DNA of 64,000 nt, from positions 62,001 to 126,000 of IMG/VR virus record IMGVR_UViG_3300042391_000634; one strand, given 5' to 3'. This document shows positions 29,519 to 47,704 of the stretch, piece by piece. A program made the translations under genes and the position numbers. The number at the start of each line of letters is the position of its first letter. The first letter of the stretch is position 1. Below the pieces are notes generated by a model. That model worked only from the letters and a program-made list of their open reading frames with translations. It did no database searches and was not told the DNA's origin.

Positions 29519-29590
29519 AGCCTCCACTCGGAATCGAACCAAGTTATCATGATTACAAGTCATGTGCATCGCCATCAATGCTTTAGAGGC
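29519..29590 (-). tRNA. tRNA-Thr(TGT)
   Basis: GCCTCTA/TGGAGGC acceptor, CATGA-CT TGT AA-TCATG, GGTTCGATTCC. Confidence 0.93.
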
Positions 29591-30511: not shown

Positions 30512-30623
30512 AATAATTTATTTAATATTATAATATAGGTTATTTTTTTATGAAAACAAAATTTTTTCAATAAAATAACTCATGAGTTTCATCAGTAGAC
30601 CAATTTATTAGTATTTATAGACA

Positions 30624-30654
30624 GACAAAAAATAAACGTATCTCTCTCAAGATA
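30624..30654 (+). repeat. Direct repeat copy 1
   Basis: GACAAAAAATAAACGTATCTCTCTCAAGATA; 28/31 identical to 44591-44621. Lies just after TATTTATA (30612-19). Confidence 0.85.
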
Positions 30655-30706
30655 TTATGTATTATATTAATATGTAGTTCTGAGAGAATTTTAAACTTGG
30701 AACAGT

Positions 30707-31354
30707 ATGGAAAAATTAAGAACATTAACAAACAACATTGGTGAAAAAATCTTTTTAGGTTTTTTATACTTTGCAATAACATGGGTAATATTAGCCGTCA
30801 TATTCGGTATATCCATGACATACTTGGAATTAGCAGGTAAAACGGAAACAACAAGAAACATAGTAAATTGGATTGATTGGAGAATTGATGGCACGTTTAA
30901 AAACTTACCTGAAAACATGTGGTATAATGCTGAAGACCATATTTGGGTTGAAAGTGTTACCAATGAGGTTAAGATGGGTAAATTGGCTGGAAATAGAAAT
31001 TTAGCTTTCGGTGTAAAAAATACATTGGAAGAATTCTTACAGGAAAAGGGTTATGATTTAACACCTTCAGCCCCATACAAATTAAAAGTTCAAATAATCT
31101 ATTTGGATGTTCTAACTACAAAAAAGAACATTTCTGTTTTTCATAAAAATGAAGAAGAAGTTGTCATTCGTATGAAAGGAACTTTATATAAGGATGGTAA
31201 AAAAGAAAAGGAAATAATGGTTGAAGAGTCATCTTCAGAAATATCAATGTCAACATTAATTGTAGATGAGGGTGGGAAATTTAATCAAACATCTTTAAGT
31301 AATGCTTTAAAAAAATCGGCGGATAAATTAATAACCAAATTATTTGATAAATAA
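30707..31354 (+). CDS. TM-anchored exported protein, partial paralog of the CsgG-like gene at 40979
   Basis: N-terminal TM. C-terminal KFNQTSLSNALKK parallels KFNQSTISIATKK in 40979..41698. Confidence 0.55.
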   Translation: MEKLRTLTNNIGEKIFLGFLYFAITWVILAVIFGISMTYLELAGKTETTRNIVNWIDWRIDGTFKNLPENMWYNAEDHIWVESVTNEVKMGKLAGNRNLAFGVKNTLEEFLQEKGYDLTPSAPYKLKVQIIYLDVLTTKKNISVFHKNEEEVVIRMKGTLYKDGKKEKEIMVEESSSEISMSTLIVDEGGKFNQTSLSNALKKSADKLITKLFDK

Positions 31355-31356
31355 TC

Positions 31357-33006
31357 ATGAAAAAACTATTAACGCTACTTGGAATACTAGTAATATCCAT
31401 AGCAACAAATGCACAATTAACGGTTAATCAATCAGTAACACCAACAACAGGATTAAAGGTTGGTGATACAGTTTCGGTAAAATACACAGTTGCAAGAGGT
31501 ACAACCACACCTCGTTATTTTTGGTTAAGATATCAATTTAACAATAAGGCACTTGCATATGTTTCAACAACGTTCTCACAAGGAACGTCGGTTCAAACAT
31601 TCTACACAGGTTGGTCGTCTTATAAGTTTACCTCAAGTGCCGCAAATAGTATTACAGCTAAAGATTTATATTCACAATATCTAATATCTCCATGGGGTTA
31701 TGCAACTAATGCAGATTGGAATGTTGGTCAATTAACAGTTCAAAGAACAGACGCTTCAATCAATGGAGATGTTGCAACTCAAAAATATGTAATTAAAGAT
31801 TTGGGAGCATATACCGACATCCACAAATTAGACTTATCATATTCAATTGACGCAACAAGTGCATACATTACACCAATTACGACTGACCCAGGTACAATGT
31901 CTTTAACAAATGTCGTGGGTAATACGTCTCAGTTCAAACTAAGAGTTTTATTCCCAACAGGATATGATATTACATCACATACGGTTGCTTTATTCCCAAT
32001 AAAAACAGATGGAACAATTGATTTTAATGTAACCCCTATTGCAACTAAAGTATTGGATGCAAGTGGTGAGGCGACATTTACAACAGAAGTTAAAGTGGGT
32101 GATAGTTTGGCGGTGTGGATGTATGGAGCAACAGGAAAAACTTTTATGAATAACATTATAACAGTATCGGATGCATATAAAGCATTTTTAGGTATTTCAC
32201 AAACGGATATTGCGGGTGTAAAAACTTATTTTACAAGACCACAATTACAAAAAAATATAGGACAAATTACAAAGAGTAAAGGTGTATTTAGTGAAAGTGA
32301 TTCATATTATATGTTTGCTTATGTAATGGGTATTGCTAATGTAAAAGATAGTGCATGGATTCCATTGAGTACAAATAGTGGTTTATTCAAATGGTATAGT
32401 GGTTTATTAAATCAAAGTTGGTTAGATGGTATACCTACTTACAAAACAAAAGTAACATCATCAAATCAATCGGTAGATATGGTATACGCATGGGGTGGTG
32501 ATTTGGATTGGTCTCATTCATCTGACCCCGATGTAATTGCATCTAGAATTGCCGCAGGAACTTACGCAAATTCAATTAATCCAAACGAACAAACTATAAA
32601 AACATTTTCAGTTCAATCAATGGCATACACACCTGTAATTGAAAAGGCAACATTAGGATTAGTTTCAACAATTTCTAACGGTAAAGTTGTTTTAACAGGA
32701 ACATTAACAAAAGACGGATTGGCGGGTTTAGAGGTAATCTTACAATATGACAATTCAAAATTAACATTTGAAAATATATCATTTGACGCTGGTCCAAATG
32801 TAACTAACTTCTCAACAAACGGAGATGGTAGATTAACATTCGGTTCTATGGATCAAATGAAAACAGGTAGAATTAAAATAGGAACACCTTACAAATTAAC
32901 TTTTACACCAAAAGAAACCATAACAAATACTGCAGGTTTATTCTATACAGTTTTAGCTGACGCGGTTGATGGAAACGGAAACAAGATTAATTTGATTGTT
33001 GAATAA
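31357..33006 (+). CDS. Secreted beta-rich protein with a dockerin-like segment and C-terminal cohesin-like domain
   Basis: Signal peptide ATNA-Q. ITVSDAYKAF and W.GDLDWSHS match paralog 33010. LAGLEVILQYDNSKLTF is a cohesin-like strand pattern. Confidence 0.55.
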   Translation: MKKLLTLLGILVISIATNAQLTVNQSVTPTTGLKVGDTVSVKYTVARGTTTPRYFWLRYQFNNKALAYVSTTFSQGTSVQTFYTGWSSYKFTSSAANSITAKDLYSQYLISPWGYATNADWNVGQLTVQRTDASINGDVATQKYVIKDLGAYTDIHKLDLSYSIDATSAYITPITTDPGTMSLTNVVGNTSQFKLRVLFPTGYDITSHTVALFPIKTDGTIDFNVTPIATKVLDASGEATFTTEVKVGDSLAVWMYGATGKTFMNNIITVSDAYKAFLGISQTDIAGVKTYFTRPQLQKNIGQITKSKGVFSESDSYYMFAYVMGIANVKDSAWIPLSTNSGLFKWYSGLLNQSWLDGIPTYKTKVTSSNQSVDMVYAWGGDLDWSHSSDPDVIASRIAAGTYANSINPNEQTIKTFSVQSMAYTPVIEKATLGLVSTISNGKVVLTGTLTKDGLAGLEVILQYDNSKLTFENISFDAGPNVTNFSTNGDGRLTFGSMDQMKTGRIKIGTPYKLTFTPKETITNTAGLFYTVLADAVDGNGNKINLIVE

Positions 33007-33009
33007 TTT

Positions 33010-35619
33010 ATGAAGAAACTATTAGTAGTATTATTTTTATTTATATCATTTTTAGGGTTTGGTCAGTCAGTAACGGCCCCAGACCCTAAATCATTTACTG
33101 TGAATACCACAGGACAAGACGCTAGTGGATTTTCATTAAGTGGATTTAGTGCAACATCTACTTTATTAGCTTCAATCAGTTTAGTTAATCCACCATCGGG
33201 AACTACATTCTATCTTAACACAACAACAGGTTTAATTGCCGCAAGTGGATTTACTTTAAGTGGTAATAAAACACGTTTAGTGGTAACTGGAACGATGGCA
33301 AGTATTAATACCGCATTAGCATCTCTAAAAATAAATACAGGAACAATAATAGGAGACATAAATATTTCAGTAGCAACAACTGTCAATCCCGTTGGGTTTT
33401 ATTATAATGGAGTAAACGGACATTTTTACAAACCGGTAACTACTGGTACAACATATACAAACGCAAGATCATCATCACTATTAACAACATTCAAAGGACA
33501 GACGGGTTATTTACTAACACTAACATCATCATCGGAAGATTTATTTATTCAAGCTAATGTACCACAATCAAATATATGGTTTGCGGCAACGGATGAAGTA
33601 ACTGATGGAACTTGGGTAATTGATGCGGGTCCTGAAAAGGGGACTGTGATGAAAACATCCAACGGACCAACTGCCGGAAACCGACCAGGTGTATATAATA
33701 ATTGGGCAAATGGTGAACCAAACGGATATAATCATAGTGAGGATTATGCGGTAACAAAATGGAATGGTAACCAATGGAATGATTTATCAAACAATTGGAG
33801 TAACCCATATGTAATTGAATATGGAACTTGGTCTAATCCCGATGATGCTACATTTACAGAATTTTATACCAATTCAGTAACACATTCAAACGGAGAAACT
33901 ATAAAAGCATTATTTGGATTTAAGTTTAATACTTCAATAGATAAAACAAAATTCTTAGCACAGATATTCAAAAGAAACGACACATATTCAAATTGGGCGG
34001 CGGCGGATGGTTATAAATCATTGAGTGGTTTGGGTAAAGTATTTCTTTCAAACCAAATAGATACTTCAAAGATTTATACAACTGGCATTCCATTAACAGC
34101 AGGAACATCCGATATGCAACAATTTAATGAATCGGATATTGGTAAGATATATAGAATAACAATAACAGGTACAACAGGTGGAGCAATATGGGGAACTGAT
34201 ATCTATACAAGTGATTCATATATTTCAGCTGCAGCGGTACATGCTGGTGTAATATCAAACGGACAAACAAAAGAAGTTTATATTAAAGTAGTGCAAGGAT
34301 TAAATGAATATATCGGATCAACTCGTAATGGAGTATCAACATCTGGTTATGGTGGTTGGGGGTTAAGTTATCAATTCGTATCAGCACCGGCATCATATAA
34401 AGCAACTATATCACCAGGAGGTGTTGAATGGTCTTATACAAATCCAAATGCAAGTTGGTTAAATGGTAATAGTAGATTGTTAATTGACATGAGACAAGTT
34501 GGAAGTATAGATCCAACTAAAATATCAAATGTAAAAATATTAGATGCATATGATGGACCGGTTACATACACATCTCATGATGCTAATGGTTGGGCAATAT
34601 ACACAGTTCCATCTCCATTAACAAAGGTAACTGACGGAACTTCGGCGTATAATCAATATATTAGAAATATGAATGGTTCAAATACCGAATATGCATTTGC
34701 ATGTGGTATTGGACTTACTCAACAAGGTGCGTTCAAACAACACAAAATGGAATTACAAGAATATGATAGTACACAATTAAAAACTTTATATAATAGTATT
34801 GTAACAGTATCAGATGTGTATTTGGCGTTTAAGGAATTGGCAAATGGCGGTATATTCGGAAATCAAAGTGGTAATGAATTTGGGTATGGTATTCAATATA
34901 AAAACGCAGATGTAAATGACGATGGTTTATTTAATGAAGCGGATTGTTTCAAATTATTACAAAACTTAACAGGTGTTCAAGATTTAGTTAGTAGTTACAC
35001 CTTAGATAATACAATACGTTTAATACCTGATTCAATTTATAATAAAATTGGTAAATCTACTTGGAAATCGTTTCAAAATTTTTCAGGAAAAACTTATAAT
35101 TTTAGTTTATTAGATAATGTAATAAGTTATAACTACGATTTGGCTGTTAGTTGGAAAGGTGACGTAAACTTATCTCATTCAGCAACTCCCCCGTCAAATA
35201 ATATTACAACGATGACAGTTAGAACATCAATGAGTACACCAATATCAACTGACATCAACGCATCTATTATGACCGAAGTAATTGGTGATAGTGTTTATGC
35301 TTACATCACATTTGACCCATTACAACAAAACGTGGTAGGAACTCAATTTCAATTAAACTATGATAATTCGGTCTTAAATTTTAAAGGAATACAATTTACC
35401 ACAAAAGGTTCACCTACCAACTATGCAACCAACAAGGGTAATTACATTAATTTAGGTTCGTTGGTAAGTGATGGTAGTACAAGTTTGGATAACACAACAA
35501 CATATAAGATTTCATTTTCGGCAAATACAAAATTGGATAACATATTGGGTTTAATTTCAATAGGTTCAACGGATGCGGTTAATAAAGATGGAAAATCATT
35601 AAAAATAAAAATAAATTAA
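33010..35619 (+). CDS. Secreted multidomain adhesin-like protein: C-type lectin, LCCL, dockerin-like and cohesin-like domains
   Basis: Signal LGFG-Q. NGHFY...YLLTLTS...W...NNWANGEPN...WNDL (CLECT); IWGTDIYTSDSYISAAAVHAGV...STRNGV (LCCL); NADVNDDGLFNEADC (dockerin/EF-loop); VGTQFQLNYDNSVL (cohesin-like). Confidence 0.7.
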   Translation: MKKLLVVLFLFISFLGFGQSVTAPDPKSFTVNTTGQDASGFSLSGFSATSTLLASISLVNPPSGTTFYLNTTTGLIAASGFTLSGNKTRLVVTGTMASINTALASLKINTGTIIGDINISVATTVNPVGFYYNGVNGHFYKPVTTGTTYTNARSSSLLTTFKGQTGYLLTLTSSSEDLFIQANVPQSNIWFAATDEVTDGTWVIDAGPEKGTVMKTSNGPTAGNRPGVYNNWANGEPNGYNHSEDYAVTKWNGNQWNDLSNNWSNPYVIEYGTWSNPDDATFTEFYTNSVTHSNGETIKALFGFKFNTSIDKTKFLAQIFKRNDTYSNWAAADGYKSLSGLGKVFLSNQIDTSKIYTTGIPLTAGTSDMQQFNESDIGKIYRITITGTTGGAIWGTDIYTSDSYISAAAVHAGVISNGQTKEVYIKVVQGLNEYIGSTRNGVSTSGYGGWGLSYQFVSAPASYKATISPGGVEWSYTNPNASWLNGNSRLLIDMRQVGSIDPTKISNVKILDAYDGPVTYTSHDANGWAIYTVPSPLTKVTDGTSAYNQYIRNMNGSNTEYAFACGIGLTQQGAFKQHKMELQEYDSTQLKTLYNSIVTVSDVYLAFKELANGGIFGNQSGNEFGYGIQYKNADVNDDGLFNEADCFKLLQNLTGVQDLVSSYTLDNTIRLIPDSIYNKIGKSTWKSFQNFSGKTYNFSLLDNVISYNYDLAVSWKGDVNLSHSATPPSNNITTMTVRTSMSTPISTDINASIMTEVIGDSVYAYITFDPLQQNVVGTQFQLNYDNSVLNFKGIQFTTKGSPTNYATNKGNYINLGSLVSDGSTSLDNTTTYKISFSANTKLDNILGLISIGSTDAVNKDGKSLKIKIN

Positions 35620-35624
35620 AAATT

Positions 35625-35906
35625 ATGGAATTTAATTTTGGATATGATGAAATGAAAAATTTTATCATTAAAAGTGGAAAATATAAAATTGTAAATGTTA
35701 AGTGTTTTAATCAAGTTCCTGGTAACTGGTATAATGGTTTCCGATATACGGAAGAAGAAGTATATGTAGAAGTGGCTTATCTAATAGATGATATTGAAAC
35801 TGAAAAATGGTTATTTAATGATGGATATAAACGAAAAGATATTCTGCAGGGGAGGATTGAATTAGCTTTTCACACAGAGATGAAAAATAAACTATTAAAT
35901 TTATAA
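35625..35906 (+). CDS. Hypothetical protein
   Basis: 93-aa ORF within the operon, no signal peptide. Confidence 0.7.
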   Translation: MEFNFGYDEMKNFIIKSGKYKIVNVKCFNQVPGNWYNGFRYTEEEVYVEVAYLIDDIETEKWLFNDGYKRKDILQGRIELAFHTEMKNKLLNL

Positions 35907-35911
35907 TATAA

Positions 35912-36799
35912 GTGAAAAAAATATTATTAATTATATCATTAGTTTTAATTGGTTTTGTTGCAAACGCACAAACGCCTGATACATTACAACTATCAGCAAA
36001 AGAATTATTTGGAGAAAGTGGTGATTGGAATAACTTAGGTATATTAGAGTCGTATATTGATTTTTCAAAAGATGTTCTTTCATCCTCAAATTTATCAGTA
36101 GGTGTAATTGGAAAACAAGTATCTACTACCTTAAATTTAGGATATAGTAAATCATCTAAAAATGGTAAATGGGGTCACTCATTCGCATCATCAATAAATC
36201 CTATATGGAATTATTATGGAGTAGGATATGGGTTCAGTAGAAATACGAATACAAGAACTACTACATTACAATCATTTTATTCAACCGATTTTGATTTTCA
36301 AAAAGATATTTCTCTATCATTTATTGATGTATTCAGAACTAAAAAGTTTGGAACATTTGGTTATAGTGTGATTGCGTCAAAATCGTTTTGGGGAAGTTAT
36401 CAAGGTCAATGGGAAGGAAAATATATAGTAGATGAAAATGGTGATTTTAAAGATTTAATATATCCACAAATGCCATCATCAAGTCAAATTAGTTATAGAG
36501 GTATGGCAATGTATACGTATACATTCAAAACAAAGAGAGTAAACATCTCACCACAAATATTTGCAATGAGTGATATCTACAAAGTATTCAAAGATGGGAC
36601 TGAATCGGATTTAGCATATGTGGATGATTTCAATTTGGACTTATATTATGGCACATCTATTGATTGGAAAATAACTAAAAAATTTGTATTGAATACTAAT
36701 GTTAGATATAACACAACTTGGGATAAATTAAGTGAATCGGTTGGGTATAAAAAGAGTAATCCAATTCTATTTATGATAGGAACAAACTTTCAATTTTAA
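35912..36799 (+). CDS. Putative outer-membrane beta-barrel protein
   Basis: Signal VANA-Q, alternating amphipathic strands, C-terminal FMIGTNFQF ending in Phe (BAM-type signal). Confidence 0.7.
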   Translation: MKKILLIISLVLIGFVANAQTPDTLQLSAKELFGESGDWNNLGILESYIDFSKDVLSSSNLSVGVIGKQVSTTLNLGYSKSSKNGKWGHSFASSINPIWNYYGVGYGFSRNTNTRTTTLQSFYSTDFDFQKDISLSFIDVFRTKKFGTFGYSVIASKSFWGSYQGQWEGKYIVDENGDFKDLIYPQMPSSSQISYRGMAMYTYTFKTKRVNISPQIFAMSDIYKVFKDGTESDLAYVDDFNLDLYYGTSIDWKITKKFVLNTNVRYNTTWDKLSESVGYKKSNPILFMIGTNFQF

Positions 36800-36802
36800 A
36801 AT

Positions 36803-37156
36803 ATGAAACGTATTAAAATTATATTATTGTGTTGTTTGGTTTTTATATTATCATGTAAAAAAACGATTCCGTTTACACCTGTGTCACCGACAAATGTGGA
36901 ATTTTTCTCCTTATCTGAAAATAAGGTAAAAAACGGGGATGTTATTAATATTAATTTAACTACAGTAGGAACATATACTTTAACAATGATTGACACGGTT
37001 CAAAACCAAGTAGTATCAAGGGAAAGATTTACTGGTAAAGTAGGATTAAACTCTCTTAAAATATTTACTAATACCTTACCGACAAAAAACCTAAGTGTCG
37101 TATTAAAGGATCAAAATAATAATCAAATAGGTAAAACAAGAATAATTATAAATTAA
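36803..37156 (+). CDS. Lipoprotein with a small Ig/T9SS-CTD-like domain
   Basis: Lipobox ILSC-KK; GTYTLTMID...GLNSLKIFTNTLP...KIIIN-like end. Confidence 0.6.
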   Translation: MKRIKIILLCCLVFILSCKKTIPFTPVSPTNVEFFSLSENKVKNGDVININLTTVGTYTLTMIDTVQNQVVSRERFTGKVGLNSLKIFTNTLPTKNLSVVLKDQNNNQIGKTRIIIN

Positions 37157-37168
37157 AAAAGACAAAAA

Positions 37169-37537
37169 ATGAAAAAAGTATCTCTCGTACTCTTTGGATT
37201 AATCTTCCTTGTTGGTTGTAGAAAAGTAGACATACCAATGCAACCACAAGTGATTAGCGACAACCTTAAAATCTCAAGTTCAGTGGGATTAAAATTAGAA
37301 ACTTCATTTATAACAAATGAAGTTGCGATGAACATAAAAAGTGATGTTGCACAAACCGTAACCGTTAAGATTTTTGATATTTCCAACAGAGTGGTATCAA
37401 AATCAACAAGTGAGGTTAAGGTTGGTGATAACATTTTAAGGGTGTATACATCCGCTTTACCGTCTTCATCATATAGGATTGCATTATATGATGTTGCGGG
37501 TAATATGTTAGGAATTACTGATTTTAATAAAATTTAA
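37169..37537 (+). CDS. Lipoprotein with a T9SS-CTD-like domain (paralog of the previous gene)
   Basis: Lipobox LVGC-RK; VTVKIFDISNRVV...GDNILRVYTSALPSSSYRIAL resembles the Por secretion C-terminal sorting domain. Confidence 0.6.
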   Translation: MKKVSLVLFGLIFLVGCRKVDIPMQPQVISDNLKISSSVGLKLETSFITNEVAMNIKSDVAQTVTVKIFDISNRVVSKSTSEVKVGDNILRVYTSALPSSSYRIALYDVAGNMLGITDFNKI

Positions 37538-37569
37538 GATAATTATATAAAGACAAAAAACACAAAATT

Positions 37570-37884
37570 ATGGCAGAAGAACAAGAAAAATCAGAAAGTA
37601 CCGGTGGTTCAATTAAGAACATAATTATCGGTTTAGTAAGCACTATCACATTAGGTGTGGGTGGTTGGTTTACAACAAAATTAACAGGTGGTGACGAAAA
37701 AGAGGCTCCCGTTCAACAAGCGGCACCTGTAATCAACATTACCAATTCACAAACTCAACAAGCGAGTGGTGGTAAAACTGTAATCATTAACAAAGGTGGA
37801 GACGGTAGTGCTAAACCTGTACCAGCACCAAAACCTAAGAAAAAAGAAGGTGATGAGTTTAAAGAAGAGGCACCTAAGTGGTAA
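37570..37884 (+). CDS. Single-TM protein with a Pro/Lys-rich tail
   Basis: IIIGLVSTITLGVGGWF TM; tail KPVPAPKPKKK. Confidence 0.7.
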   Translation: MAEEQEKSESTGGSIKNIIIGLVSTITLGVGGWFTTKLTGGDEKEAPVQQAAPVINITNSQTQQASGGKTVIINKGGDGSAKPVPAPKPKKKEGDEFKEEAPKW

Positions 37885-37909
37885 TTTAACATAAAAAAAT
37901 TTATATAAA

Positions 37910-38530
37910 ATGGCAGACAAACAACCACCAAGTGGTTTTAAGGATTTATTAAGTAATATGATGGCCAGACGATGGTACATCACAGCATTGGTATTGGGTG
38001 GATTTATGTTAATTATAGGGGGTATGTTCTTCGCTATATTAAGTAAATCGGAAATAGCAGGAGAATGGAAAGAACTTTTATTATTGTTATTGGGTGCGTT
38101 CATCGGTAGTTATGGTAAAATCATTGACTATTGGTTTAGTGATACTGATAAGGATAAGATGTTAGTTCAGAAAATGGATGAGGAGGATGGTACAACATTA
38201 AGTAATACTGCGGATTTACCTGTAACTCCACCAAATAATACTCCATTAATACCTGATGCGTTTGTACAAGCAGCAAAAAATGCACATGAAATCAATTTAA
38301 TAGAAGCCAACAAACCAAAAGAAGAAATTAAAGTTGAATCACCAAAACCAACACCGAGAACTGGTGTTGAAGTAGATGAAGATGGTGATGGAACTATGGA
38401 TGGTATTGATTTTGACGGTGACGGAAAAATTGACATATATTTCGCACACAGACAATGTGAACACGTATGGGGTGATTTAGATGGTGATGGTACTGAAGAG
38501 TGTTTAAAATGTGGTAAAATAAAAGATTAA
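37910..38530 (+). CDS. Two-TM protein with DxDGDG Ca-binding loops and a Cys/His C-terminus
   Basis: Two TMs; DEDGDG, DFDGDG, DLDGDG; CEH...CLKCG. Confidence 0.7.
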   Translation: MADKQPPSGFKDLLSNMMARRWYITALVLGGFMLIIGGMFFAILSKSEIAGEWKELLLLLLGAFIGSYGKIIDYWFSDTDKDKMLVQKMDEEDGTTLSNTADLPVTPPNNTPLIPDAFVQAAKNAHEINLIEANKPKEEIKVESPKPTPRTGVEVDEDGDGTMDGIDFDGDGKIDIYFAHRQCEHVWGDLDGDGTEECLKCGKIKD

Positions 38531-38586
38531 AATGTAGAAATACATACGGAAGGATAAAATAAACAAAAGACAAAAAATAAAAAACT

Positions 38587-38835
38587 ATGACATTTAAACA
38601 ATGGGTTATTGAACTTTTCAAAGATGAAAGAGGTTCTATTTCAGTTAAACCAGTTATTGCATTTATAGGAGCATTATTCCTATGTGTTACTATGGTTTTA
38701 AATTCGTTCTCTCACGCGGATTTTGCTCCATCACCTGAATTGGTGAATGCGGTGATGTTAATCACGGGAATCGGAATGGGTGCAGATACTTTGGATAAAT
38801 TCTCTCACAAAAAGAAAGAAGAAACAGAAGGTTAA
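38587..38835 (+). CDS. Small two-TM protein, holin-like
   Basis: 82 aa, two TMs, charged C-terminus KKKEETEG. Function is inference. Confidence 0.5.
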   Translation: MTFKQWVIELFKDERGSISVKPVIAFIGALFLCVTMVLNSFSHADFAPSPELVNAVMLITGIGMGADTLDKFSHKKKEETEG

Positions 38836-38841
38836 TACGAA

Positions 38842-38866
38842 AGGGAGTTAAAAACTCCCTTTTTTT
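38842..38866 (+). terminator. Rho-independent terminator
   Basis: AGGGAGTT-aaa-AACTCCCT then TTTTTT, followed by TATTTATA at 38870. Confidence 0.85.
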
Positions 38867-38887
38867 ATGTATTTATATTAAAAGAAT

Positions 38888-39961
38888 ATGATAAAAGAAC
38901 AAATTCCTACAGGTTGGCAAGGTGGTTTTCCCTCTGAAAATCAAAATCAAATGCTATATCCTACTACAGATTTAACTTCATTACCTATGTTAGGTAATAT
39001 GGATAACATTAATTTACTACAAAGACAATGGGGTGTTAAATGGCCAATGTTTAGTTGGAATACCCTAAATGGGGAAAAAGACCCAAAACGTTGTTATGTA
39101 CAATTTGCTCCTTATATTTCAAGAATAGGATATACCAATGAAGGTAGAATTTATTCCATAATCTGTCCTCAACAAGGGATGTGGATTGGAGATGAGATTT
39201 GTATCAATGTGGAAGTAACAGTTACGGGACAAAGAGGATGGGTTAATGAAGACACAAAGGAAATTGCTGCGGATATGATGGTTGAGGGAAAAATTTGGTT
39301 AACACCAGGTGAAAATCAAGGTGGTCTATTAAGAGCAATTTGGCCATTATTAAAATACAGTTCTCGTAAGTATCCTATCAACAAAGAAAATGCTATTCGT
39401 GTTTTAACACATCTACCAGGAAATCCTAAAGAACCTATATTTCAACTCGGAAAGGGTTTATCACCAAGATTTAAGAATCCTGATTTTGCCATAAAGGAAG
39501 AAGCATATAGTACAGGACATATCAATGTAGAAATAGGAGGAATGGTAACAACAAGTGATCACAAATTAGATAAGTTTAATCAATACTTTTTAAATCTTTT
39601 TAACTTAGGTACGGGTAATATGTTACAAAAGGGTAATGTATTATCGTGGAATTTATTTTTTGATTCACCTGAATTAGTTTCAGTTCCTGAATGGCAAAAT
39701 CACGCTGACTATTGGCGTACTTCCATAGGTGCACATCACGGTTCACCAGGTGGTGAGGGAACAAGTCCAAGATATTTTGATGGAACCTATTTTGATACCA
39801 AAAATTTCGCCATTAAAGAGGTCATAAAAGATATTTTAGAACACGTTGTAAAAAACTCCACATTGAGAAAGGGTTTAATATTACTTGTAGAATATTGTCC
39901 TAAAACAATATTTGATATATTCTTAAAGAAAGGTGATCAATCTAAAACAAAAACACAATAA
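38888..39961 (+). CDS. Hypothetical protein, 357 aa
   Basis: Long ORF after a late motif; no recognised family. Confidence 0.8.
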   Translation: MIKEQIPTGWQGGFPSENQNQMLYPTTDLTSLPMLGNMDNINLLQRQWGVKWPMFSWNTLNGEKDPKRCYVQFAPYISRIGYTNEGRIYSIICPQQGMWIGDEICINVEVTVTGQRGWVNEDTKEIAADMMVEGKIWLTPGENQGGLLRAIWPLLKYSSRKYPINKENAIRVLTHLPGNPKEPIFQLGKGLSPRFKNPDFAIKEEAYSTGHINVEIGGMVTTSDHKLDKFNQYFLNLFNLGTGNMLQKGNVLSWNLFFDSPELVSVPEWQNHADYWRTSIGAHHGSPGGEGTSPRYFDGTYFDTKNFAIKEVIKDILEHVVKNSTLRKGLILLVEYCPKTIFDIFLKKGDQSKTKTQ

Positions 39962-39964
39962 ACT

Positions 39965-40201
39965 ATGGAAGAAGAATTAATTGGGTCAATTAAATTATTT
40001 GCAGGGGGCTACGCTCCTCAAGGATATGTAGAATGCAACGGACAATTATTAAACATAAGGGAAAATGAGGCGTTATATGTATTACTGCAAGATAGATACG
40101 GAGCAACACCAAATTTATTTGCAGTACCTAAAATGGAACCACCTATGGATGGTATGAAATACATAATAGCCACTCGTGGTATATGGCCAGCAAGACAGTA
40201 A
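39965..40201 (+). CDS. Stand-alone phage tail-collar domain protein
   Basis: IGSIKLFAGGYAPQGYVECNGQLL...ALYVLL...YG. Confidence 0.85.
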   Translation: MEEELIGSIKLFAGGYAPQGYVECNGQLLNIRENEALYVLLQDRYGATPNLFAVPKMEPPMDGMKYIIATRGIWPARQ

Positions 40202-40225
40202 TATTATAACAAAAACAAATACACA

Positions 40226-40969
40226 ATGACAAAAAACGAAATACTATACAATGTCGGTTTAACCGAGAAAGTATATTCAGAACAAAAAGACATTGATTTT
40301 AAAGCACAAAGATTAAAATTAATTAAATGGATTGACGATAAAAAAACAGATACACAAGGATTTGTTGCCACAAAGGATAAATCTATCTATATCGTTTGGA
40401 GAGGAAGTTCTTCTAAAAAGGATTTCCAAAACGACGCATCAATTGATAAAGTTCCATTTGTTCAAGATGGTGAAAAAGTTCACATTGGATTTAAATCATC
40501 TTGGGACGCTGTTAAAGACGAAACTTATAAATCATTTGAAAAAGCATTATCCACATTAGGTGGAGAAGGCGAAGTTGATAATATTATTGTTTGTGGACAC
40601 AGTTTGGGTGCTGCAGTTTCTACCTTGTGTGCGTATGAGATATATTCAATTTATAAATCAAATAAGATTATATGTTGTACTATCGGTAGTCCAAGAGTTG
40701 GTAATAAAGTATTCAAACAAAACTTTGATAAATCATCAATTGAATCATTGAGAATCGTTCATAATAACGACGTGGTAACACATTCTCCATATATTGGATA
40801 CTATCACGTCAATCAGATGTTACGTATCGATAGTGAGGGTAATATTAAGAAGTTCATGATTGATTGGGAACGTGCTTGGAATTATTTTAAATCTATGGTA
40901 ACGGGTAAGAACATTAAAGACCACATGACCGATGGATATATCAGTTCATTAAATAAATGGAATCCCTAA
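40226..40969 (+). CDS. Class 3 lipase (alpha/beta hydrolase)
   Basis: IYIVWRGS, VHIGF, CGHSLGAA nucleophile elbow, IGSPRVGN, NDVV, DH. Confidence 0.92.
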   Translation: MTKNEILYNVGLTEKVYSEQKDIDFKAQRLKLIKWIDDKKTDTQGFVATKDKSIYIVWRGSSSKKDFQNDASIDKVPFVQDGEKVHIGFKSSWDAVKDETYKSFEKALSTLGGEGEVDNIIVCGHSLGAAVSTLCAYEIYSIYKSNKIICCTIGSPRVGNKVFKQNFDKSSIESLRIVHNNDVVTHSPYIGYYHVNQMLRIDSEGNIKKFMIDWERAWNYFKSMVTGKNIKDHMTDGYISSLNKWNP

Positions 40970-40978
40970 AAAAAATAT

Positions 40979-41698
40979 ATGAAAAAATTATTAATATTAT
41001 TAAGCGTTTGTTTAGTAGGTCTTGTTGCAAATAGTCAAACAATAGGTTCAACAAAAACCGAACAATATAAAGCAGATTTTGAAAAGAAAAGAGACATAAG
41101 TGCGTACATGGACTACGATGGTCCTCAAATACCCATCCAAATACTAAAGGCGGGTATTTCTGATGAGATGTACGAGATGTATCCTGAATTAAAAGAAAAA
41201 CGTGTTGGTTTGGGTGTTGCTAACATTTCAATGGAATACCTTGAAAACTTAAACAGATTCAAATTTACCGAGGATAAGACAGAAATTAAGAATAGGATGG
41301 TAAAACAATTTCAAGCATCTGCGGCAGGTATTTCCGAGAATAAATTAGATGGACGTGGTAAAATCAATTTGGCGAAGTATTTTGTTACGATTGAGTGTTA
41401 TGACTACTCGGTGTCAGAAGATGAAACTATCAACCTAAAAGACGGTATTAAAGACAATATGGTGACTCGTATAGGTCTTCAGGTTAGATTTACTGACGCT
41501 GAGACAGGTGTCTTGTTTGGTGGGTCAGGTTTAGGTGAGGCAACAACAAAAAGAGAACTAACTCTTTTATCCGATGCAACAGTTGACCCAATTAAATTTA
41601 ATCAATCAACAATTAGTATTGCAACGAAGAAAGCTTTAGACATTGCATGCGCTAATATCCTTGATAGAATGATTAAAAAAGGTATATTCACGAAATAA
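40979..41698 (+). CDS. Secreted CsgG/HfaB-like protein
   Basis: Signal VANS-Q; GLGVANI...NRFKFTE...AKYFVTIECYDYS...IGLQVRFTDAETG follows the CsgG-family layout. Confidence 0.55.
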   Translation: MKKLLILLSVCLVGLVANSQTIGSTKTEQYKADFEKKRDISAYMDYDGPQIPIQILKAGISDEMYEMYPELKEKRVGLGVANISMEYLENLNRFKFTEDKTEIKNRMVKQFQASAAGISENKLDGRGKINLAKYFVTIECYDYSVSEDETINLKDGIKDNMVTRIGLQVRFTDAETGVLFGGSGLGEATTKRELTLLSDATVDPIKFNQSTISIATKKALDIACANILDRMIKKGIFTK

Positions 41699-41931
41699 TG
41701 AAATACGAAGTAGTGGACGTTCCACAAAATAATCCTTGCGAAAATTGTACACCATGTATGAGATTAAAATTAATGGAAATGGGGTTTATACATGGGCAAG
41801 AAATTGAAATAAGTGAAAAGAAACTTGGGCTTTATTTAGTAAATATTATATCCGATGGAGGACAGATAGATTCGACTGTAGCACTCAGACAAGAAGAATT
41901 AGATAGAATATGTTTAAAAGGGGTTTTATAA
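41698..41931 (+). CDS. FeoA (SH3-like) domain protein
   Basis: RLKLMEMGFIHGQEIEI...VALRQEE. Confidence 0.75.
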   Translation: MKYEVVDVPQNNPCENCTPCMRLKLMEMGFIHGQEIEISEKKLGLYLVNIISDGGQIDSTVALRQEELDRICLKGVL

Positions 41932-41941
41932 CCCCTTTTTT
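41916..41941 (+). terminator. Rho-independent terminator
   Basis: AAAAGGGGTT-ttat-AACCCCTTTTT, followed by TATTTATA at 41944. Confidence 0.8.
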
Positions 41942-41955
41942 AATATTTATATTAT

Positions 41956-42135
41956 ATGAAAAAGTTTAAGAGAGTTCACGACGATAAAGTTTTCTTTGGT
42001 GTGTGCAGTGGTTTAAGTCACCGTACCAATGTTGACCCATTAGTTTGGAGGTTGTTGTTCTTTTTTTTAATATTTTCACCAGTCCCAATAATAACCGGTT
42101 ATTTACTAACCACAATTTTAACTGAAACAGTATGA
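41956..42135 (+). CDS. PspC-domain membrane protein, 59 aa (not in the ORF track)
   Basis: MKKFKRVHDDKVFFGVCSGLSHRTNVDPLVWRLLFFFL... has the PspC GVC.GL...DP..R signature. Confidence 0.8.
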   Translation: MKKFKRVHDDKVFFGVCSGLSHRTNVDPLVWRLLFFFLIFSPVPIITGYLLTTILTETV

Positions 42136-42977
42136 AAAAGGTTTTATTAGTTACAGGATTAACAATATTGTTAATTTTAATCTGTGCAATAATGTTGAAG
42201 GCTCAAGTATCAACTTGGAGACAAACTGGTGGAAGTGTTCCGGCATCATCACAAACATCACAATCAACTCAAACAAGAGTTCAACCATCTATACCACAAC
42301 AACAAAATGTGAGTAGTTGGAGAAATAATCAACCGCAACAACCTAATCCAGACCCACGTGGTAGAGTACGTGTTCAAAATTGGAATAGAAATAATCAATT
42401 TGGTTACTATTGGGGTAATTGGGGATGGTATCAACCAATGCCTTACATTTGGTATGATGATTTTGGATGGAGACAAAGAAGTATAATTCATATCTATGAA
42501 AATGGAAAAAGAGATACAATCCCATCAAAACCTGTATTGTTTTCAGTTGGACTTGGTCATACTACTAATAAACAGGCAAATTGGTGGGGAATGATCGGTA
42601 GAGATAAATTATATTTTATTTTAGATTATGTAATGACTTATGATATTGACCATAACCAATACTATCCATATGGTAAAATTAATAATGTAGATTTTCCACT
42701 CGATCCAAATGATTTTATAAAAGAAGGAACATTATATTTTGGTATGGGTAAAAAAGTTAATGGATTTGGTATTCATACTATGATAGGATTTGGTAACGAA
42801 GTAATTAGATATCAAGGTAAAGATGACTTGGGAGGTATTTCATTTCCAAAATCAAAATCAAATTTTACAACATTTAAAATTGGATTAATAAAAGAATTTA
42901 AAATTATTACAATAAAATTAGATGCTGACCCAATAAGAGGATATACACAAATAGGAATAGGCTTGAATAACAAATAA
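42132..42977 (+). CDS. Secreted protein: low-complexity Q/N/P/W N-terminus plus probable OM beta-barrel
   Basis: Signal MLKA-Q; amphipathic strands ending YTQIGIGLNNK. Confidence 0.6.
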   Translation: MKKVLLVTGLTILLILICAIMLKAQVSTWRQTGGSVPASSQTSQSTQTRVQPSIPQQQNVSSWRNNQPQQPNPDPRGRVRVQNWNRNNQFGYYWGNWGWYQPMPYIWYDDFGWRQRSIIHIYENGKRDTIPSKPVLFSVGLGHTTNKQANWWGMIGRDKLYFILDYVMTYDIDHNQYYPYGKINNVDFPLDPNDFIKEGTLYFGMGKKVNGFGIHTMIGFGNEVIRYQGKDDLGGISFPKSKSNFTTFKIGLIKEFKIITIKLDADPIRGYTQIGIGLNNK

Positions 42978-44557
42978 TGAAGAAATATATTATCTCTCTC
43001 CTAATATTATTTTTTTGTGGTGAGTCGTTTGGTCAAACCATAACACAAACATATATCGATCCGTGTGATCAAAAGGTATATGTGGTTATTATTCCATTCG
43101 GACAAAATCAAACTATTGCAGTTATTAGAGGTAAATCTAAAATTGTAACATTATCGGATATCAGTAGTGGTGCATTTCAAACATGGGTCAATAGTGTATT
43201 TGCAACTCCATGTCCACAAAACGAAACAATTAGATTAGCACAAGAAGCCGCTGCGAGGGCGGCTGCGGATGCTGCGGCAAGGGCTGCTGCTGATGCTGCG
43301 GCAAAAGCTGCGGCGGATGCTGCCGCAAAGGCCGCGTCAGATGCTGCGGCAAAAGCTGCTGCGGATGCTGCAGCATCAAGTGCATCATCTGCGGCAAGTA
43401 ATTCGGCATCTACCGCAGCTTCATCGGCAGCAAGTTCAGCGGCAAGTTCTGCCGCGAGTGGTGCCGCTGGTGGAGCTGCAAGTTCTGCTGCGGCAAGTGC
43501 ATCAACACCACCACCAATAACAGCACCACCTCCACCTGCTGCGGCACCTCCACCAGCAAGTAGTTCATCATCACCACCTCCTGCAAGTGGTGGTAGTTCA
43601 TCATCGAGTAGTGGTGGAAGTTCTTCTTCATCGGAAACTAAAACAGAAACTAAAACTGAAGCAAAAACAGAAAGTAAAACTGAGGAAACTAAAACAGAAA
43701 GTAAAACAGAAGAAAAGAAAACAGAAAGTAAAACAGAAGAAAAGAAAGAAGAATCAAAAACTGAAGAAAAGAAAGAAGAATCAAAAAAGGAAGAAACTAA
43801 AAAAGAGGAGGAGAAGAAAGAAGAAAGTAAAAAAGAAGAAGAGAAAAAGAAAGAGGAAGAGAAAAAGAAAAAAGAGGAAGAAAAGAAAAAACAAGCAATA
43901 ACAAATCCATTACTTTTATCTTCTGATTTAACAACAGCACAAACGGTGGATAATAGATATTTGGTGCAAATTTCTATGGGTGTAAGTAAATCATCTATGG
44001 CTGGCGATGAAAGCTTTAGTGGGGGATTGACAATTAATAGTGATTTAAGTTCAATTGTAACAACTGGTGGATACACTAAAATGGCAATGACAGAAGATGG
44101 TAATTTAGATGCCATACATTCGTATGGAACCGCGTTCGCATATCTTGCAGGAAATTACATGAATTTATTAGGTTATACTTGGATTAAACCAACACCTAAA
44201 AAAGGAACATTTGGTTATAATGTTGGTGTTATTAATTTATTTCTTAAAAACGATAAGGGTGGTTTTGATTATAATATGGCATCGTCAGCAATTGCATTTT
44301 GGACTAAACCATATGTTTATTCTAAAAAACTAACAGTATCACCACAGGTGTTCACAATGTTCTCACCTATCTCTTGGAATAGTGTTACAGGAGTATCGAC
44401 GGTTAACAGACATATGGGATTTTTATTAGGTAGTTCTTTTGATTATAAATTAACCAAAAGATTTGGATTTAGTTTTAACTACAAAATGAGTGGTAACACA
44501 AAACCTGGTTCTCCGTTCTTAAGTAATTTCTTGATAGGTAGTAGAATGATGTTGTAA
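42977..44557 (+). CDS. Secreted protein: long Ala/Ser/Pro/Lys-Glu linker plus probable OM beta-barrel
   Basis: Signal ESFG-Q; (AAADAAAK)n, PPPA and (ESKTEEKK)n tracts; C-terminal alternating strands ending FLIGSRMML. Confidence 0.65.
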   Translation: MKKYIISLLILFFCGESFGQTITQTYIDPCDQKVYVVIIPFGQNQTIAVIRGKSKIVTLSDISSGAFQTWVNSVFATPCPQNETIRLAQEAAARAAADAAARAAADAAAKAAADAAAKAASDAAAKAAADAAASSASSAASNSASTAASSAASSAASSAASGAAGGAASSAAASASTPPPITAPPPPAAAPPPASSSSSPPPASGGSSSSSSGGSSSSSETKTETKTEAKTESKTEETKTESKTEEKKTESKTEEKKEESKTEEKKEESKKEETKKEEEKKEESKKEEEKKKEEEKKKKEEEKKKQAITNPLLLSSDLTTAQTVDNRYLVQISMGVSKSSMAGDESFSGGLTINSDLSSIVTTGGYTKMAMTEDGNLDAIHSYGTAFAYLAGNYMNLLGYTWIKPTPKKGTFGYNVGVINLFLKNDKGGFDYNMASSAIAFWTKPYVYSKKLTVSPQVFTMFSPISWNSVTGVSTVNRHMGFLLGSSFDYKLTKRFGFSFNYKMSGNTKPGSPFLSNFLIGSRMML

Positions 44558-44590
44558 AAAAAATCCCCGAAGTAGAAACCTCGAGGATGT

Positions 44591-44621
44591 GACAAAAAAT
44601 AAATGTATCTCTCTCCTGATA
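44591..44621 (+). repeat. Direct repeat copy 2
   Basis: GACAAAAAATAAATGTATCTCTCTCCTGATA; 28/31 identical to 30624-30654. Confidence 0.85.
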
Positions 44622-44645
44622 CTTTACTAATATATTAATTAGATT

Positions 44646-44981
44646 TCAAGAAGTCAATTCTTTATGTAAATTTAATACTTGACCACACATTTCATAATCT
44701 TCATTTTCTTCAAAAAAAGGTAATATATCTCTTTTTAAAACAATTGTTTCATTACGATGAAATTCAAATTCAGTGTTCCAATCTGCATTTTTAAATTTAG
44801 CGGAAATCTTTAAGACTAAAGATTTTTCTTTAGTGTTTTTAAACTCCTCAAAAATTTCAATTATTGATTTATAAATTTCTTCTTTATTTGGGCCATAAAA
44901 ATCTTTCCAATCTCTATACAAACCATTAATAATCAATTCTTTGTAAGGTTTTTTGTTTGATTTTTGAGCATTTTTTTCCAT
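44646..44981 (-). CDS. Hypothetical protein with a C-terminal UVR-like motif
   Basis: FFEENEDYEMCGQVLNL. Confidence 0.6.
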   Translation of the reverse strand: MEKNAQKSNKKPYKELIINGLYRDWKDFYGPNKEEIYKSIIEIFEEFKNTKEKSLVLKISAKFKNADWNTEFEFHRNETIVLKRDILPFFEENEDYEMCGQVLNLHKELTS

Positions 44982-45035
44982 TGGGTAAGTTTTAGTTTAG
45001 ATTATAAAGTTAGTAAATATTATTAATAAAAAAAA

Positions 45036-45515
45036 TTATTTTTTACTACGGTCCCATTTAGCCTTTCTTAACTCAGGGGATATTAAATGACTCTCATCTA
45101 TTGTATGTTCAATTTTAACGTTTATACAGGTTTGGGGTAAACTACAATTTTTTAAATAATTGTTAATATATCCCATCATATTAGCACTACCAATAGGGTT
45201 TGCCGAATGAATATAAACCTGGGGTAAAGGTATTTTTTCATTCATACTTTCAGCAACCAAATACCTACAACAATCCATACCAGTTTTTTCTTCTATGTTG
45301 TTATAATCCAACATATAATTATTTTTTACATTTGTATAATATTCTATCATGGCACCTTCACCTAAATCATGATCTAAAGATATTACATCAAAATTACCTA
45401 AACTATGTAATTTAATTGCAGCCACAAATTCATCGTAATTACGGGCAATAACCCAATCCTCAGCATTAGGGGTTCTAACGTCATCGAGATATAATCTCTT
45501 TTTTTCAATTTTCAT
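45036..45515 (-). CDS. Cyclic-phosphate-processing receiver-like domain protein
   Basis: LYLDDVRTP, SLDHDLG, TGMDC..YL and HSANPIG; adjacent to the RNA ligase. Confidence 0.75.
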   Translation of the reverse strand: MKIEKKRLYLDDVRTPNAEDWVIARNYDEFVAAIKLHSLGNFDVISLDHDLGEGAMIEYYTNVKNNYMLDYNNIEEKTGMDCCRYLVAESMNEKIPLPQVYIHSANPIGSANMMGYINNYLKNCSLPQTCINVKIEHTIDESHLISPELRKAKWDRSKK

Positions 45516-46575: not shown

Positions 46576-46817
46576 TAGTTTATTATTTTGTGGAATCCGA
46601 TGTTGTATGTATATTTTAACCAATTAAAGGACAAATATATCCCACATATTTTGTTTTTCCAAATTGATACATGAGAATCTGGTTGACATGTTTCAAAATA
46701 AAAATAAACAAAAGGTAATGGATATAATGACCATTGGTTTCTAAGTAAGTTAGCGTGAAATTTCATCTTTGGTTTTGGATTTATGGACTCAATAAAAGAA
46801 ACAATAAATTGACTCAT
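46575..46817 (-). CDS. Hypothetical protein
   Basis: 80-aa aromatic-rich ORF filling the gap between kinase and ligase with abutting ends. Confidence 0.6.
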   Translation of the reverse strand: MSQFIVSFIESINPKPKMKFHANLLRNQWSLYPLPFVYFYFETCQPDSHVSIWKNKICGIYLSFNWLKYTYNIGFHKIIN

Positions 46818-47246
46818 CTATAACTTTATTTCAAACCTATTCTTCATTTGTTGGAGTTTATTTTCAGGCACTCCGTGAATATTTTGATTTCCGTGTCTAT
46901 TTTCAACAATTACCGTATGAACTCTATAATTGTATCTTTCTGCCATTTTAAAATATTCATCCATTTCCCATTCTTGGGTAAATGTGTTTGCCACAACAAT
47001 ACGTGCAATTTCTTGTCTCATTCTTTCTGAACATCTAAATTGACAATAATTATGAGCTTCTTTTATTTTGGAACCATCAAAAATATAATCACCATTATCA
47101 TCCACAAAAAAATCATCAGCTGATAAAACTTCTTGCGGATTATTATTTGGTTGTTGTAAAATGATATTAGCTAATGTTGATTTCCCTGAACCGGAAACAC
47201 CCCTTAAAAGTATTAAGTCACCTTTTATTTCGTTTACATTATCCAT
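46818..47246 (-). CDS. P-loop polynucleotide kinase-like protein (AAA_33)
   Basis: LLRGVSGSGKST, LSADDFF, VANTF, NIHGVP. Confidence 0.85.
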   Translation of the reverse strand: MDNVNEIKGDLILLRGVSGSGKSTLANIILQQPNNNPQEVLSADDFFVDDNGDYIFDGSKIKEAHNYCQFRCSERMRQEIARIVVANTFTQEWEMDEYFKMAERYNYRVHTVIVENRHGNQNIHGVPENKLQQMKNRFEIKL

Positions 47247-47670: not shown

Positions 47671-47704
47671 TATATAATTTTACTAAAAAGTAAACTATTT
47701 ATGA

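What the first reader, a model, noticed from the sequence alone, without database searches (positions are those of the whole stretch)
30624..44621. 31-bp repeat brackets the envelope block and could act as a trans-antisense switch
Seen: copy 1 (30624-54) is in the leader just after the late motif. Copy 2 (44591-621) is 28/31 identical, and both are followed by TATATTAAT 8-9 nt later. A third 15/16 match (TATCTCTCTCCTAATA, 42991-43006) covers codons 5-10 of the last gene. Copy 2 lies between the stop of the minus-strand RNA-repair operon and its terminator hairpin (~44557-589), so that transcript's 3' end is complementary to both plus-strand sites. Inference: an early 3'-UTR-derived sRNA that silences the late envelope module, or a recombination scar from acquiring the block.
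Basis: partly seen in the sequence, partly recalled or inferred. Interest (0 to 1): 0.6.

Follow-up and report, generated by a model that had tools for sequence, protein, structure and literature searches.

The report
Conserved antisense RNA pair in a lake phage
A 31-base sequence at the start of a late "envelope protein" message of a giant lake phage recurs, in complementary form, in the tail of a neighbouring early RNA-repair message; the two copies have changed together in many related phages, which suggests that one RNA pairs with the other to control it.

Summary
Copy 1 (30624-30654) and copy 2 (44591-44621) are 28/31 identical and are the only two copies in the 335-kb phage genome. Both are conserved at the same places in dozens of related lake phages that encode bS21 and probably infect Bacteroidota.

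Copy 1 begins at the predicted 5' end of an unusually long, structured leader. The phage's other late genes are almost leaderless. Copy 2 belongs to the minus-strand operon (kinase, Rnl1-type ligase, cREC, p111). It lies between the p111 stop codon and an intrinsic terminator whose stem keeps pairing through compensatory changes.

The copy-2 hairpin is kept through G·U pairs that exist only in minus-strand RNA. The two copies share lineage-specific changes: an insertion, a deletion and a full variant. Weaker copies of the same sequence sit on the start regions of two other block genes (42977 and 37169), built with very rare CTC leucine codons.

Best reading, about 50% likely: the 3' end of the operon transcript is a trans-acting antisense RNA aimed at the block's messages. 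No transcript data could be obtained, so the RNA itself, its sign of action and its timing are inferred. I found no support for a recombination scar, a mobile cassette or a structural "switch".

The parts
30612..30619 (+). Late promoter-like motif TATTTATA upstream of the block
   Evidence: It is the most enriched gene-oriented 8-mer in upstream regions (65 of 414, 8.8-fold). It normally lies 3-22 nt before the ATG. Here it lies 87 nt before it.
30624..30654 (+). Copy 1 (c1): the first about 31 nt of the predicted late mRNA. An A-rich single-stranded 5' tail is followed by hairpin SL1 (arms 30638-30642 and 30651-30655, CU-rich loop 30643-30650).
   Evidence: The first about 29 nt are nearly invariant in 12 type-A leaders, while the rest of the leader varies.
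30624..30706 (+). Long structured 5' leader of gene 30707-31354. It includes SL3 (30677-30684 pairing with 30696-30703), which ends 3 nt before the AUG.
   Evidence: In SL3, 96 of 96 cells are paired and 2 pairs show compensatory changes. Among the late genes this leader is the outlier in length.
30707..44557 (+). Block of about 18 plus-strand genes for secreted, lipoprotein or membrane proteins, in three late units: 30707-38835, 38888-41931 and 41956-44557.
   Evidence: ORFs. Pfam finds LCCL, C-type lectin, weak cohesin-like, Lipase_3, Collar, FeoA and PspC domains. Internal terminators lie at 38839-38863 and 41916-41939. Late motifs precede 38888 and 41956.
37161..37186 (+). c4: a partial copy over the start codon and codons 1-6 of lipoprotein gene 37169-37537
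   Evidence: Second-best of 414 start regions for pairing with anti-c2 (-25.8 kcal/mol). Both of its Leu codons are CTC, which makes up 1.4% of Leu codons. It is kept only in the close relatives G001 and G003.
42977..43006 (+). c3: a partial copy over the start codon to codon 10 of the last block gene (core 42991-43006)
   Evidence: Best of 414 start regions (-27.0 kcal/mol; median -9.4, sd 3.0). It uses the rare codons CTC and CTA. It is present in 22 of 26 lineages whose c2 loop has CTCTCC and in 0 of 7 with other loops.
44555..44588 (-). Intrinsic terminator of the minus-strand operon: stem-loop 44563-44588 followed by a T-run
   Evidence: In 22 relatives, 5 of 7 stem pairs show compensatory changes. 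The T-run follows the stem only on the minus strand.
44591..44622 (-). Copy 2 (c2), read as minus-strand RNA ('anti-c2'): hairpin SL1 (44605-44622, purine-rich loop AGGAGAGA), then a U-rich linker (44591-44604) that runs up to the terminator
   Evidence: Conserved in all 38 distinct intergenic sequences. The hairpin is more stable as minus-strand RNA in 29 of 31 sequences. One stem pair is U·G in 14 of 22 sequences.
44646..47246 (-). Minus-strand RNA-repair-type operon whose 3' UTR carries c2: AAA_33 kinase (46818-47246), an 80-aa ORF, an Rnl1-type RNA ligase (45505-46623), cREC_REC (45036-45515) and p111 (44646-44981)
   Evidence: Pfam and PHROGs. Bacteroidota-type promoter-like sites end at 46632 and 49740 on the minus strand. 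The p111 model has pLDDT 87 and no significant PDB match.

Best explanation
The two copies are the two halves of an RNA-RNA pairing system. This is inferred from sequence, not shown by transcript data.

The minus-strand operon (kinase, Rnl1 ligase, cREC, p111) ends in a 3' UTR built like a base-pairing small RNA. It has a hairpin with the purine-rich loop AGGAGAGA, then a U-rich single-stranded linker, then an intrinsic terminator. This 3' end may act as part of the full mRNA or as a processed fragment of about 65-75 nt.

It is complementary to the first about 31 nt of the late mRNA of the envelope-protein block: its A-rich 5' tail and the CU-rich loop of its first hairpin. It is less extensively complementary to the start regions of genes 42977 and 37169.

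Pairing probably begins loop-to-loop or tail-to-linker and grows into a duplex of 25-30 bp. That duplex would block translation or mark the late message for cleavage by a double-strand RNase. Expression of the envelope-acting proteins would then be held down while the operon transcript is abundant.

The reverse direction is equally allowed by the data: the late leader could remove the operon mRNA.

Shown: anatomy, conservation, strand of the hairpin, shared changes in the two copies. Inferred: existence of the RNA species, timing, sign of the effect.
For: 1. The repeat is unique to these two sites and is far beyond chance.

2. Similarity starts at the predicted transcript start. In leaderless late genes the ATG lies 3-4 nt after TATTTATA, and the repeat starts 4 nt after the motif.

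3. This is the only late gene with a long leader. The leader is structured and conserved.

4. Copy 2 is kept in all 38 distinct sequences, always next to the terminator on the operon side. This holds even where an extra gene separates it from the block.

5. Its hairpin is kept by G·U pairs that exist only in minus-strand RNA (29 of 31 sequences). The ATG inside copy 2 is not conserved, so it is not a plus-strand ORF.

6. The copies share lineage-specific changes. G007 has the same CAA insertion and the same shortened loop in both. L044/L163 both have five A's. L098/L150 both carry a full variant, with cognate duplex energy -35.5 against -9 to -18 kcal/mol for non-cognate pairs. G005 has GTACC in both. 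Yet stable differences between the copies persist (C/T at position 14, TATC/TACC), which argues against recent gene conversion.

7. The stems differ between the copies while the loops and tails match.

8. Of 414 start regions, the two best partners of anti-c2 are both in the block. Both use CTC codons (1.4% of Leu codons). Presence of c3 tracks the c2 loop type.

9. Three distant relatives whose first-gene leader lacks c1 also lack c2.
Against: There is no transcript evidence at all.

The tests of shared change are not corrected for phylogeny and rest on perhaps 4-6 independent events.

In two lineages complementarity is down to 10-14 contiguous nt (type B leaders and G004).

The window's own pair has a C·A mismatch at position 14.

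The local hairpin of copy 1 shows no strand preference.

Blocking the leader's 5' part does not change the predicted accessibility of the AUG, so the way pairing would alter expression is unknown.

A-rich starts followed by CU-rich signal-peptide codons could partly explain c3 and c4 through common ancestry of gene starts.

The 'early' label of the operon rests only on consensus promoter matches.
Confidence: 0.5

Rival explanations
1. The two elements have a common origin but independent cis functions. Copy 2 is a 3'-end stabiliser or terminator helper of the operon mRNA. Copy 1 is a 5' stabiliser or translation leader. They stay alike through occasional gene conversion or shared sequence preferences, without pairing with each other.
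For: Each copy forms its own hairpin with its own compensating stem. Both sit at transcript ends, where protective structures are common. Copies c1 to c4 all resemble an A-rich start region followed by signal-peptide codons, which suggests duplicated gene starts. Complementarity is reduced in type B and G004 lineages.
Against: The primary sequence of the single-stranded tail and loop, which is not needed for a hairpin, is the most conserved part and is the same in both copies. Changes shared by both copies in several lineages coexist with stable differences between the copies, which is hard to obtain from conversion alone. Rare-codon use at c3 and c4, and the tracking of c3 with the c2 loop type, point to a trans partner.
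Confidence: 0.22
2. Both copies are double-stranded DNA operators for one phage DNA-binding protein. It would repress the late promoter at +1 to +31 and act as a roadblock, or form a loop, at the far end of the block.
For: The direct repeats sit exactly at a promoter's start site and at a boundary between convergent transcription units. The GTATC-N8-GATAC dyad looks like an operator.
Against: The substitutions keep G·U pairing on only one strand, which is an RNA signature. The sites change together between lineages, which would require the protein's specificity to change each time. The dyad arms differ between the copies while the non-dyad tail is shared. No DNA-binding domain was found next to either copy.
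Confidence: 0.1
3. The repeats are a recombination scar, or recombination sites, that bracket an acquired or excisable 14-kb cassette.
For: The direct repeats flank a block whose G+C content is slightly higher (0.31-0.36 against about 0.29). The left flank varies: G003 lacks the PhyH gene.
Against: The block is syntenic in every close relative examined. Copy 2 stays with the operon's terminator, not with the block. The deletion-junction pattern gave 0 hits in viral and metagenome contigs, against 11 metagenome contigs with the intact c1 junction. Pfam finds no recombinase in or beside the block. Strong purifying selection and RNA-type covariation are not expected of a scar.
Confidence: 0.04

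Closest known systems
3'UTR-derived base-pairing small RNAs of bacteria (for example CpxQ, SroC; from my own knowledge). 5'- and 3'-UTR-derived ncRNA candidates are also reported in Pseudomonas phages (PMC10914365).
   Same: The regulatory sequence lies just upstream of the intrinsic terminator of an mRNA. The layout is hairpin, U-rich linker, terminator. Targets are 5' UTRs or the first codons of envelope-protein mRNAs.
   Different: This one is encoded by a lytic jumbo phage, and its predicted targets are the phage's own late genes. Complementarity is much longer (25-31 nt) than a typical seed of 7-12 nt. No RNA species or chaperone has been shown.
P4 CI RNA and P1/P7 c4 RNA: phage antisense RNAs that act in trans on repeated target sites (from my own knowledge)
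   Same: A phage-encoded antisense RNA recognises several short repeated sequences elsewhere in the same genome to hold back a set of phage genes.
   Different: Those RNAs are processed from the same transcript as their targets and control lysogenic immunity. Here the regulator would come from an oppositely oriented operon in a phage with an early/late lytic programme.
IS10 RNA-OUT/RNA-IN and CopA/CopT-type antisense pairs (from my own knowledge)
   Same: A hairpin loop on one RNA meets the extreme 5' end or a loop of the target. A long duplex then forms and blocks translation or recruits RNase III.
   Different: Those pairs are cis-encoded on overlapping DNA. Here the partners are 14 kb apart, and their complementarity is kept by shared changes.
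bS21-encoding Bacteroidetes phages of freshwater lakes (PMC9723584)
   Same: The genome belongs to this group. It is about 335 kb, carries a bS21 gene at window 60185-60331, is held by lake metagenome runs, and its nearest cultured relative by RNA ligase is Tenacibaculum phage pT24.
   Different: In the parts of that paper I read (abstract, outline, section 13), neither the repeat, the long leader, nor the leaderless late promoters are described.

Membership tests
3'UTR-derived / terminator-proximal base-pairing sRNA | The regulatory sequence lies between a stop codon and the mRNA's own intrinsic terminator | tested here: met
   c2 lies at 44591-44622, between the stop codon at 44646-44648 and the terminator at 44555-44588. 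The terminator shows covariation.
3'UTR-derived / terminator-proximal base-pairing sRNA | A discrete, stable RNA species is detectable | not testable with these tools
The RNA runs hold only 0.05-0.07 of the sampled words.
3'UTR-derived / terminator-proximal base-pairing sRNA | A conserved seed is complementary to target mRNAs at the 5' UTR or start region | tested here: met
   c1 lies at the mRNA 5' end. c3 and c4 rank first and second of 414 start regions.
3'UTR-derived / terminator-proximal base-pairing sRNA | Regulator and target show compensatory changes | tested here: inconclusive
   Several lineages share changes in both copies. The events are few, and no phylogenetic correction was made.
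3'UTR-derived / terminator-proximal base-pairing sRNA | Dependence on an RNA chaperone (Hfq or ProQ) | not tested
   The adjacent protein p111 has a confident model but no significant fold match.
Mobile cassette bounded by recombination sites | Presence/absence polymorphism at the repeat boundaries, or hybrid junctions | tested here: not met
   0 deletion junctions against 11 intact junctions. The block is present in all close relatives.
Mobile cassette bounded by recombination sites | An associated recombinase | tested here: not met
   No integrase, recombinase or transposase domain was found in or beside the block.
Any curated RNA family (Rfam 15) | A match to a covariance model over the leader or c2 | tested here: not met
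   No hit at E<=1 over 30600-30710 or 44550-44650.
Riboswitch-like structural switch in the leader | Two mutually exclusive conserved folds that change accessibility of the start site | tested here: not met
   The alternative CU:GA helix is 87% paired but shows no covariation. Blocking nt 1-25 leaves AUG accessibility unchanged in most relatives.

The most novel reading that the evidence does not exclude
A lytic jumbo phage times or doses a whole module of envelope-directed proteins after transcription. The 3' end of an early RNA-repair operon would serve as a multi-target antisense RNA against the 5' end and the start regions of late messages. That regulator would have arisen by capturing a copy of a target gene's start in inverted orientation, in the way plant microRNA genes arise from their targets.
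Probability: 0.3. Interest if true: 0.75.

Novelty: new variant of a known kind. Interest (0 to 1): 0.6.

Why it matters
Control of phage gene expression after transcription by the phage's own small RNAs is barely explored, and nothing is known for phages of Bacteroidota. In those hosts translation starts without Shine-Dalgarno pairing, and these phages even supply their own ribosomal protein bS21. A conserved pair of RNAs that have changed together gives a concrete, testable case. It links an early operon to a late module of secreted, lipoprotein and membrane proteins (including a lipase and a PspC-domain protein). It also comes with natural 'compensatory mutants' in dozens of metagenomic relatives. 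The finding shows as well that late genes in this phage group are essentially leaderless, which makes the one long leader stand out.

Tried and rejected
- **Read evidence.** The last gene was searched only as 42977-43096 or 43841-44554.
- **Rfam.** Nothing matched either copy.
- **uORF reading.** The ATG inside the repeat is C/T-variable in c1 and absent in several c2 variants, so this reading is rejected.
- **Structural switch of the leader.** Not supported.
- **Host-type or late promoter directly upstream of anti-c2.** I found only chance-level AT-rich matches. In several relatives the p111 stop codon abuts the hairpin. I therefore treat anti-c2 as a 3' UTR and not as a gene with its own promoter.
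- **p111 as a nucleic-acid-binding partner.** The model is confident, but the best PDB hits have E>=0.056 and TM<=0.41, so no conclusion is possible.
- **Deletion junction or empty site.** None found. Distant relatives place cREC and the ligase in another context without p111 or c2. This is a rearrangement, not an empty site.
- **TATATTAAT tail.** It is conserved only among the closest relatives, so it is not part of the core element.
- **Phage databases.** The block proteins have no PHROG and no match in cultured phages.
Full report
**Context.** The window is bases 62001-126000 of a 335,630-bp IMG/VR virus record with about 30% G+C. The genome encodes ribosomal protein bS21 at window 60185-60331 on the minus strand. 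Its DNA is held by many lake-water metagenome runs. Its Rnl1-type ligase is closest, among cultured phages, to that of Tenacibaculum phage pT24. It therefore belongs to the bS21-encoding phages of freshwater lakes that are predicted to infect Bacteroidetes (PMC9723584).

The 25-nt core occurs exactly at 30624-30648 and 44591-44615, apart from one C/T position, and no shuffle gave a match. Over 31 nt the copies differ at 3 positions. No third copy exists in the genome even at 8 mismatches. Copy 2 lies between the stop codon of minus-strand gene 44646-44981 and a hairpin (44563-44588) followed by a T-run on the minus strand only.

**What copy 1 is.** TATTTATA is the dominant upstream motif that is oriented with genes (65 of 414 upstream regions, 8.8-fold enriched).
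- In almost every case it lies 3-22 nt before the ATG, often only 3-4 nt. Late messages here are therefore leaderless or nearly so.
- Gene 30707 is the exception, with 87 nt between motif and ATG.
- The repeat begins 4 nt after the motif. That is where transcripts must start if the leaderless genes begin at their AUG.
- Copy 1 is thus the extreme 5' end of a long leader.

The leader is conserved in the closest of 210 IMG/VR relatives of the first gene.
- Its first about 29 nt are almost invariant, while the remainder varies.
- A hairpin ending 3 nt before the AUG (30677-30703) is paired in 96 of 96 cells and shows two compensatory pairs.

**What copy 2 is.** I collected 38 distinct sequences of this intergenic region, anchored on the cREC gene.
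- All keep the terminator, with 5 of 7 stem pairs showing compensatory changes.
- After 2-5 nt comes the repeat, folded as a small hairpin.
- Where an extra small gene is inserted after the block's last gene, the terminator and copy 2 stay on the operon side.
- The hairpin is more stable as minus-strand RNA in 29 of 31 sequences, by 3.4 kcal/mol on average.
- One stem pair is U·G in 14 sequences, U-A in 5 and C-G in 3. On the plus strand these would be C·A mismatches.
- The ATG inside copy 2 is not conserved.

Copy 2 is therefore an element of the minus-strand RNA: a hairpin with loop AGGAGAGA, a U-rich linker and a terminator, at the end of an operon. That operon encodes an AAA_33 kinase, an 80-aa ORF, an Rnl1-type ligase, a cREC_REC protein and p111.

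**The copies belong together.** For 12 genomes with both copies, the predicted duplex between leader and operon 3' end is -26 to -41 kcal/mol. Several lineages changed both copies in the same way:
- G007 has the same CAA insertion and the same shortened loop in both.
- L044/L163 both have five A's instead of six.
- L098/L150 share a full variant (cognate -35.5 against -9 to -18 kcal/mol for non-cognate pairs).
- G005 has GTACC in both. G002 has the same shifted stem in both.

Fixed differences between the copies persist across lineages (C/T at position 14, TATC/TACC, different 3' arms), so recent gene conversion is unlikely. Three distant relatives whose first-gene leader lacks copy 1 also lack copy 2.

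**More targets.** I scored the minus-strand RNA (reverse complement of 44591-44625) against the start regions of all 414 ORFs.
- Gene 42977 comes first (-27.0 kcal/mol) and gene 37169 second (-25.8). The median is -9.4 and the sd 3.0. Both genes are in the block.
- The CU tract in both is written with CTC leucine codons, which make up 1.4% of Leu codons in this genome.
- The site on gene 42977 is present in 22 of 26 lineages whose copy-2 loop has CTCTCC and in none of 7 with another loop (Fisher 8e-5, not corrected for phylogeny).
- The site on gene 37169 is kept only in close relatives.

**Mechanism.** The best-supported reading is a trans-acting antisense RNA carried by the operon's 3' end. 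It would pair with the 5' end of the first late unit and with two start regions in the block. Bacteroidota-type promoter matches lie before the ligase (ending at 46632) and before the ClpB-like gene (ending at 49740). Against the late motif before the block, these suggest an early-versus-late relation, but they are consensus matches only. I could not show the RNA, its processing or its effect. A refolding switch of the leader is not supported.

**Rivals.**
- A recombination scar or cassette is disfavoured by synteny, by the absence of a recombinase and by the junction counts (0 deletion junctions against 11 intact).
- A shared DNA operator is disfavoured by the one-strand G·U pattern and by the changes the two copies share.
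- Independent cis elements of common origin remain the main rival.

**Limits.** I worked beside those places afterwards and sent none of their letters to any search tool. All statistics that use relatives ignore shared descent.

Noticed in passing
window 47562-47664 (-), late motif at about 47665-47672: A late promoter motif is followed by about 100 nt without an ORF and then a strong intrinsic terminator. The stretch is 88-92% identical in G002, G004 and G005, whose proteins are only 50-80% identical. It is probably a conserved late non-coding RNA gene. It has no Rfam match.
   Followed up: partly
whole genome (G000); examples at window 16819, 38888, 41956, 57593: TATTTATA lies 3-7 nt before the ATG of about 30 genes and within 22 nt of most others. 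Late mRNAs of this phage group therefore appear to be leaderless. This is notable because the phage also encodes bS21.
   Followed up: partly
window 60185-60331 (-): A ribosomal protein bS21 gene (Pfam PF01165, 44 bits) places the genome among the published bS21 lake phages.
   Followed up: yes
window 44646-44981 (-): The 111-aa protein p111 is always encoded directly upstream of copy 2. It is absent from relatives that lack copy 2. Its model is confident (pLDDT 87) but has no significant match to any solved fold. The weak top hits are PD-(D/E)XK-type nucleases.
   Followed up: partly
window 43220-43900: The last block gene has long low-complexity runs (Ala-rich, Ser-rich, Pro-rich, Lys/Glu-rich repeats) between its signal peptide and a conserved C-terminal domain.
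   Followed up: no
window 29054-29126 (-) and 29519-29590 (-): Two tRNA genes lie just left of the block. A Bacteroidota-type promoter match ends at 29629 on the minus strand.
   Followed up: no
L146, L169, L171, L180, L183, L193; also G012 and G013 (L202, L203): Some relatives carry an extra small minus-strand ORF between the block's last gene and the terminator. G001 carries an extra gene of about 730 bp before the last block gene. G002, G004 and G005 lack the three genes 38888-40969 (a 357-aa protein, the Collar-domain protein and the lipase).
   Followed up: partly
window 29729-30511 (-): The PhyH-family dioxygenase gene left of copy 1 is absent in G003, while copy 1 and the block remain. 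The left flank is therefore variable, and copy 1 belongs to the block.
   Followed up: partly
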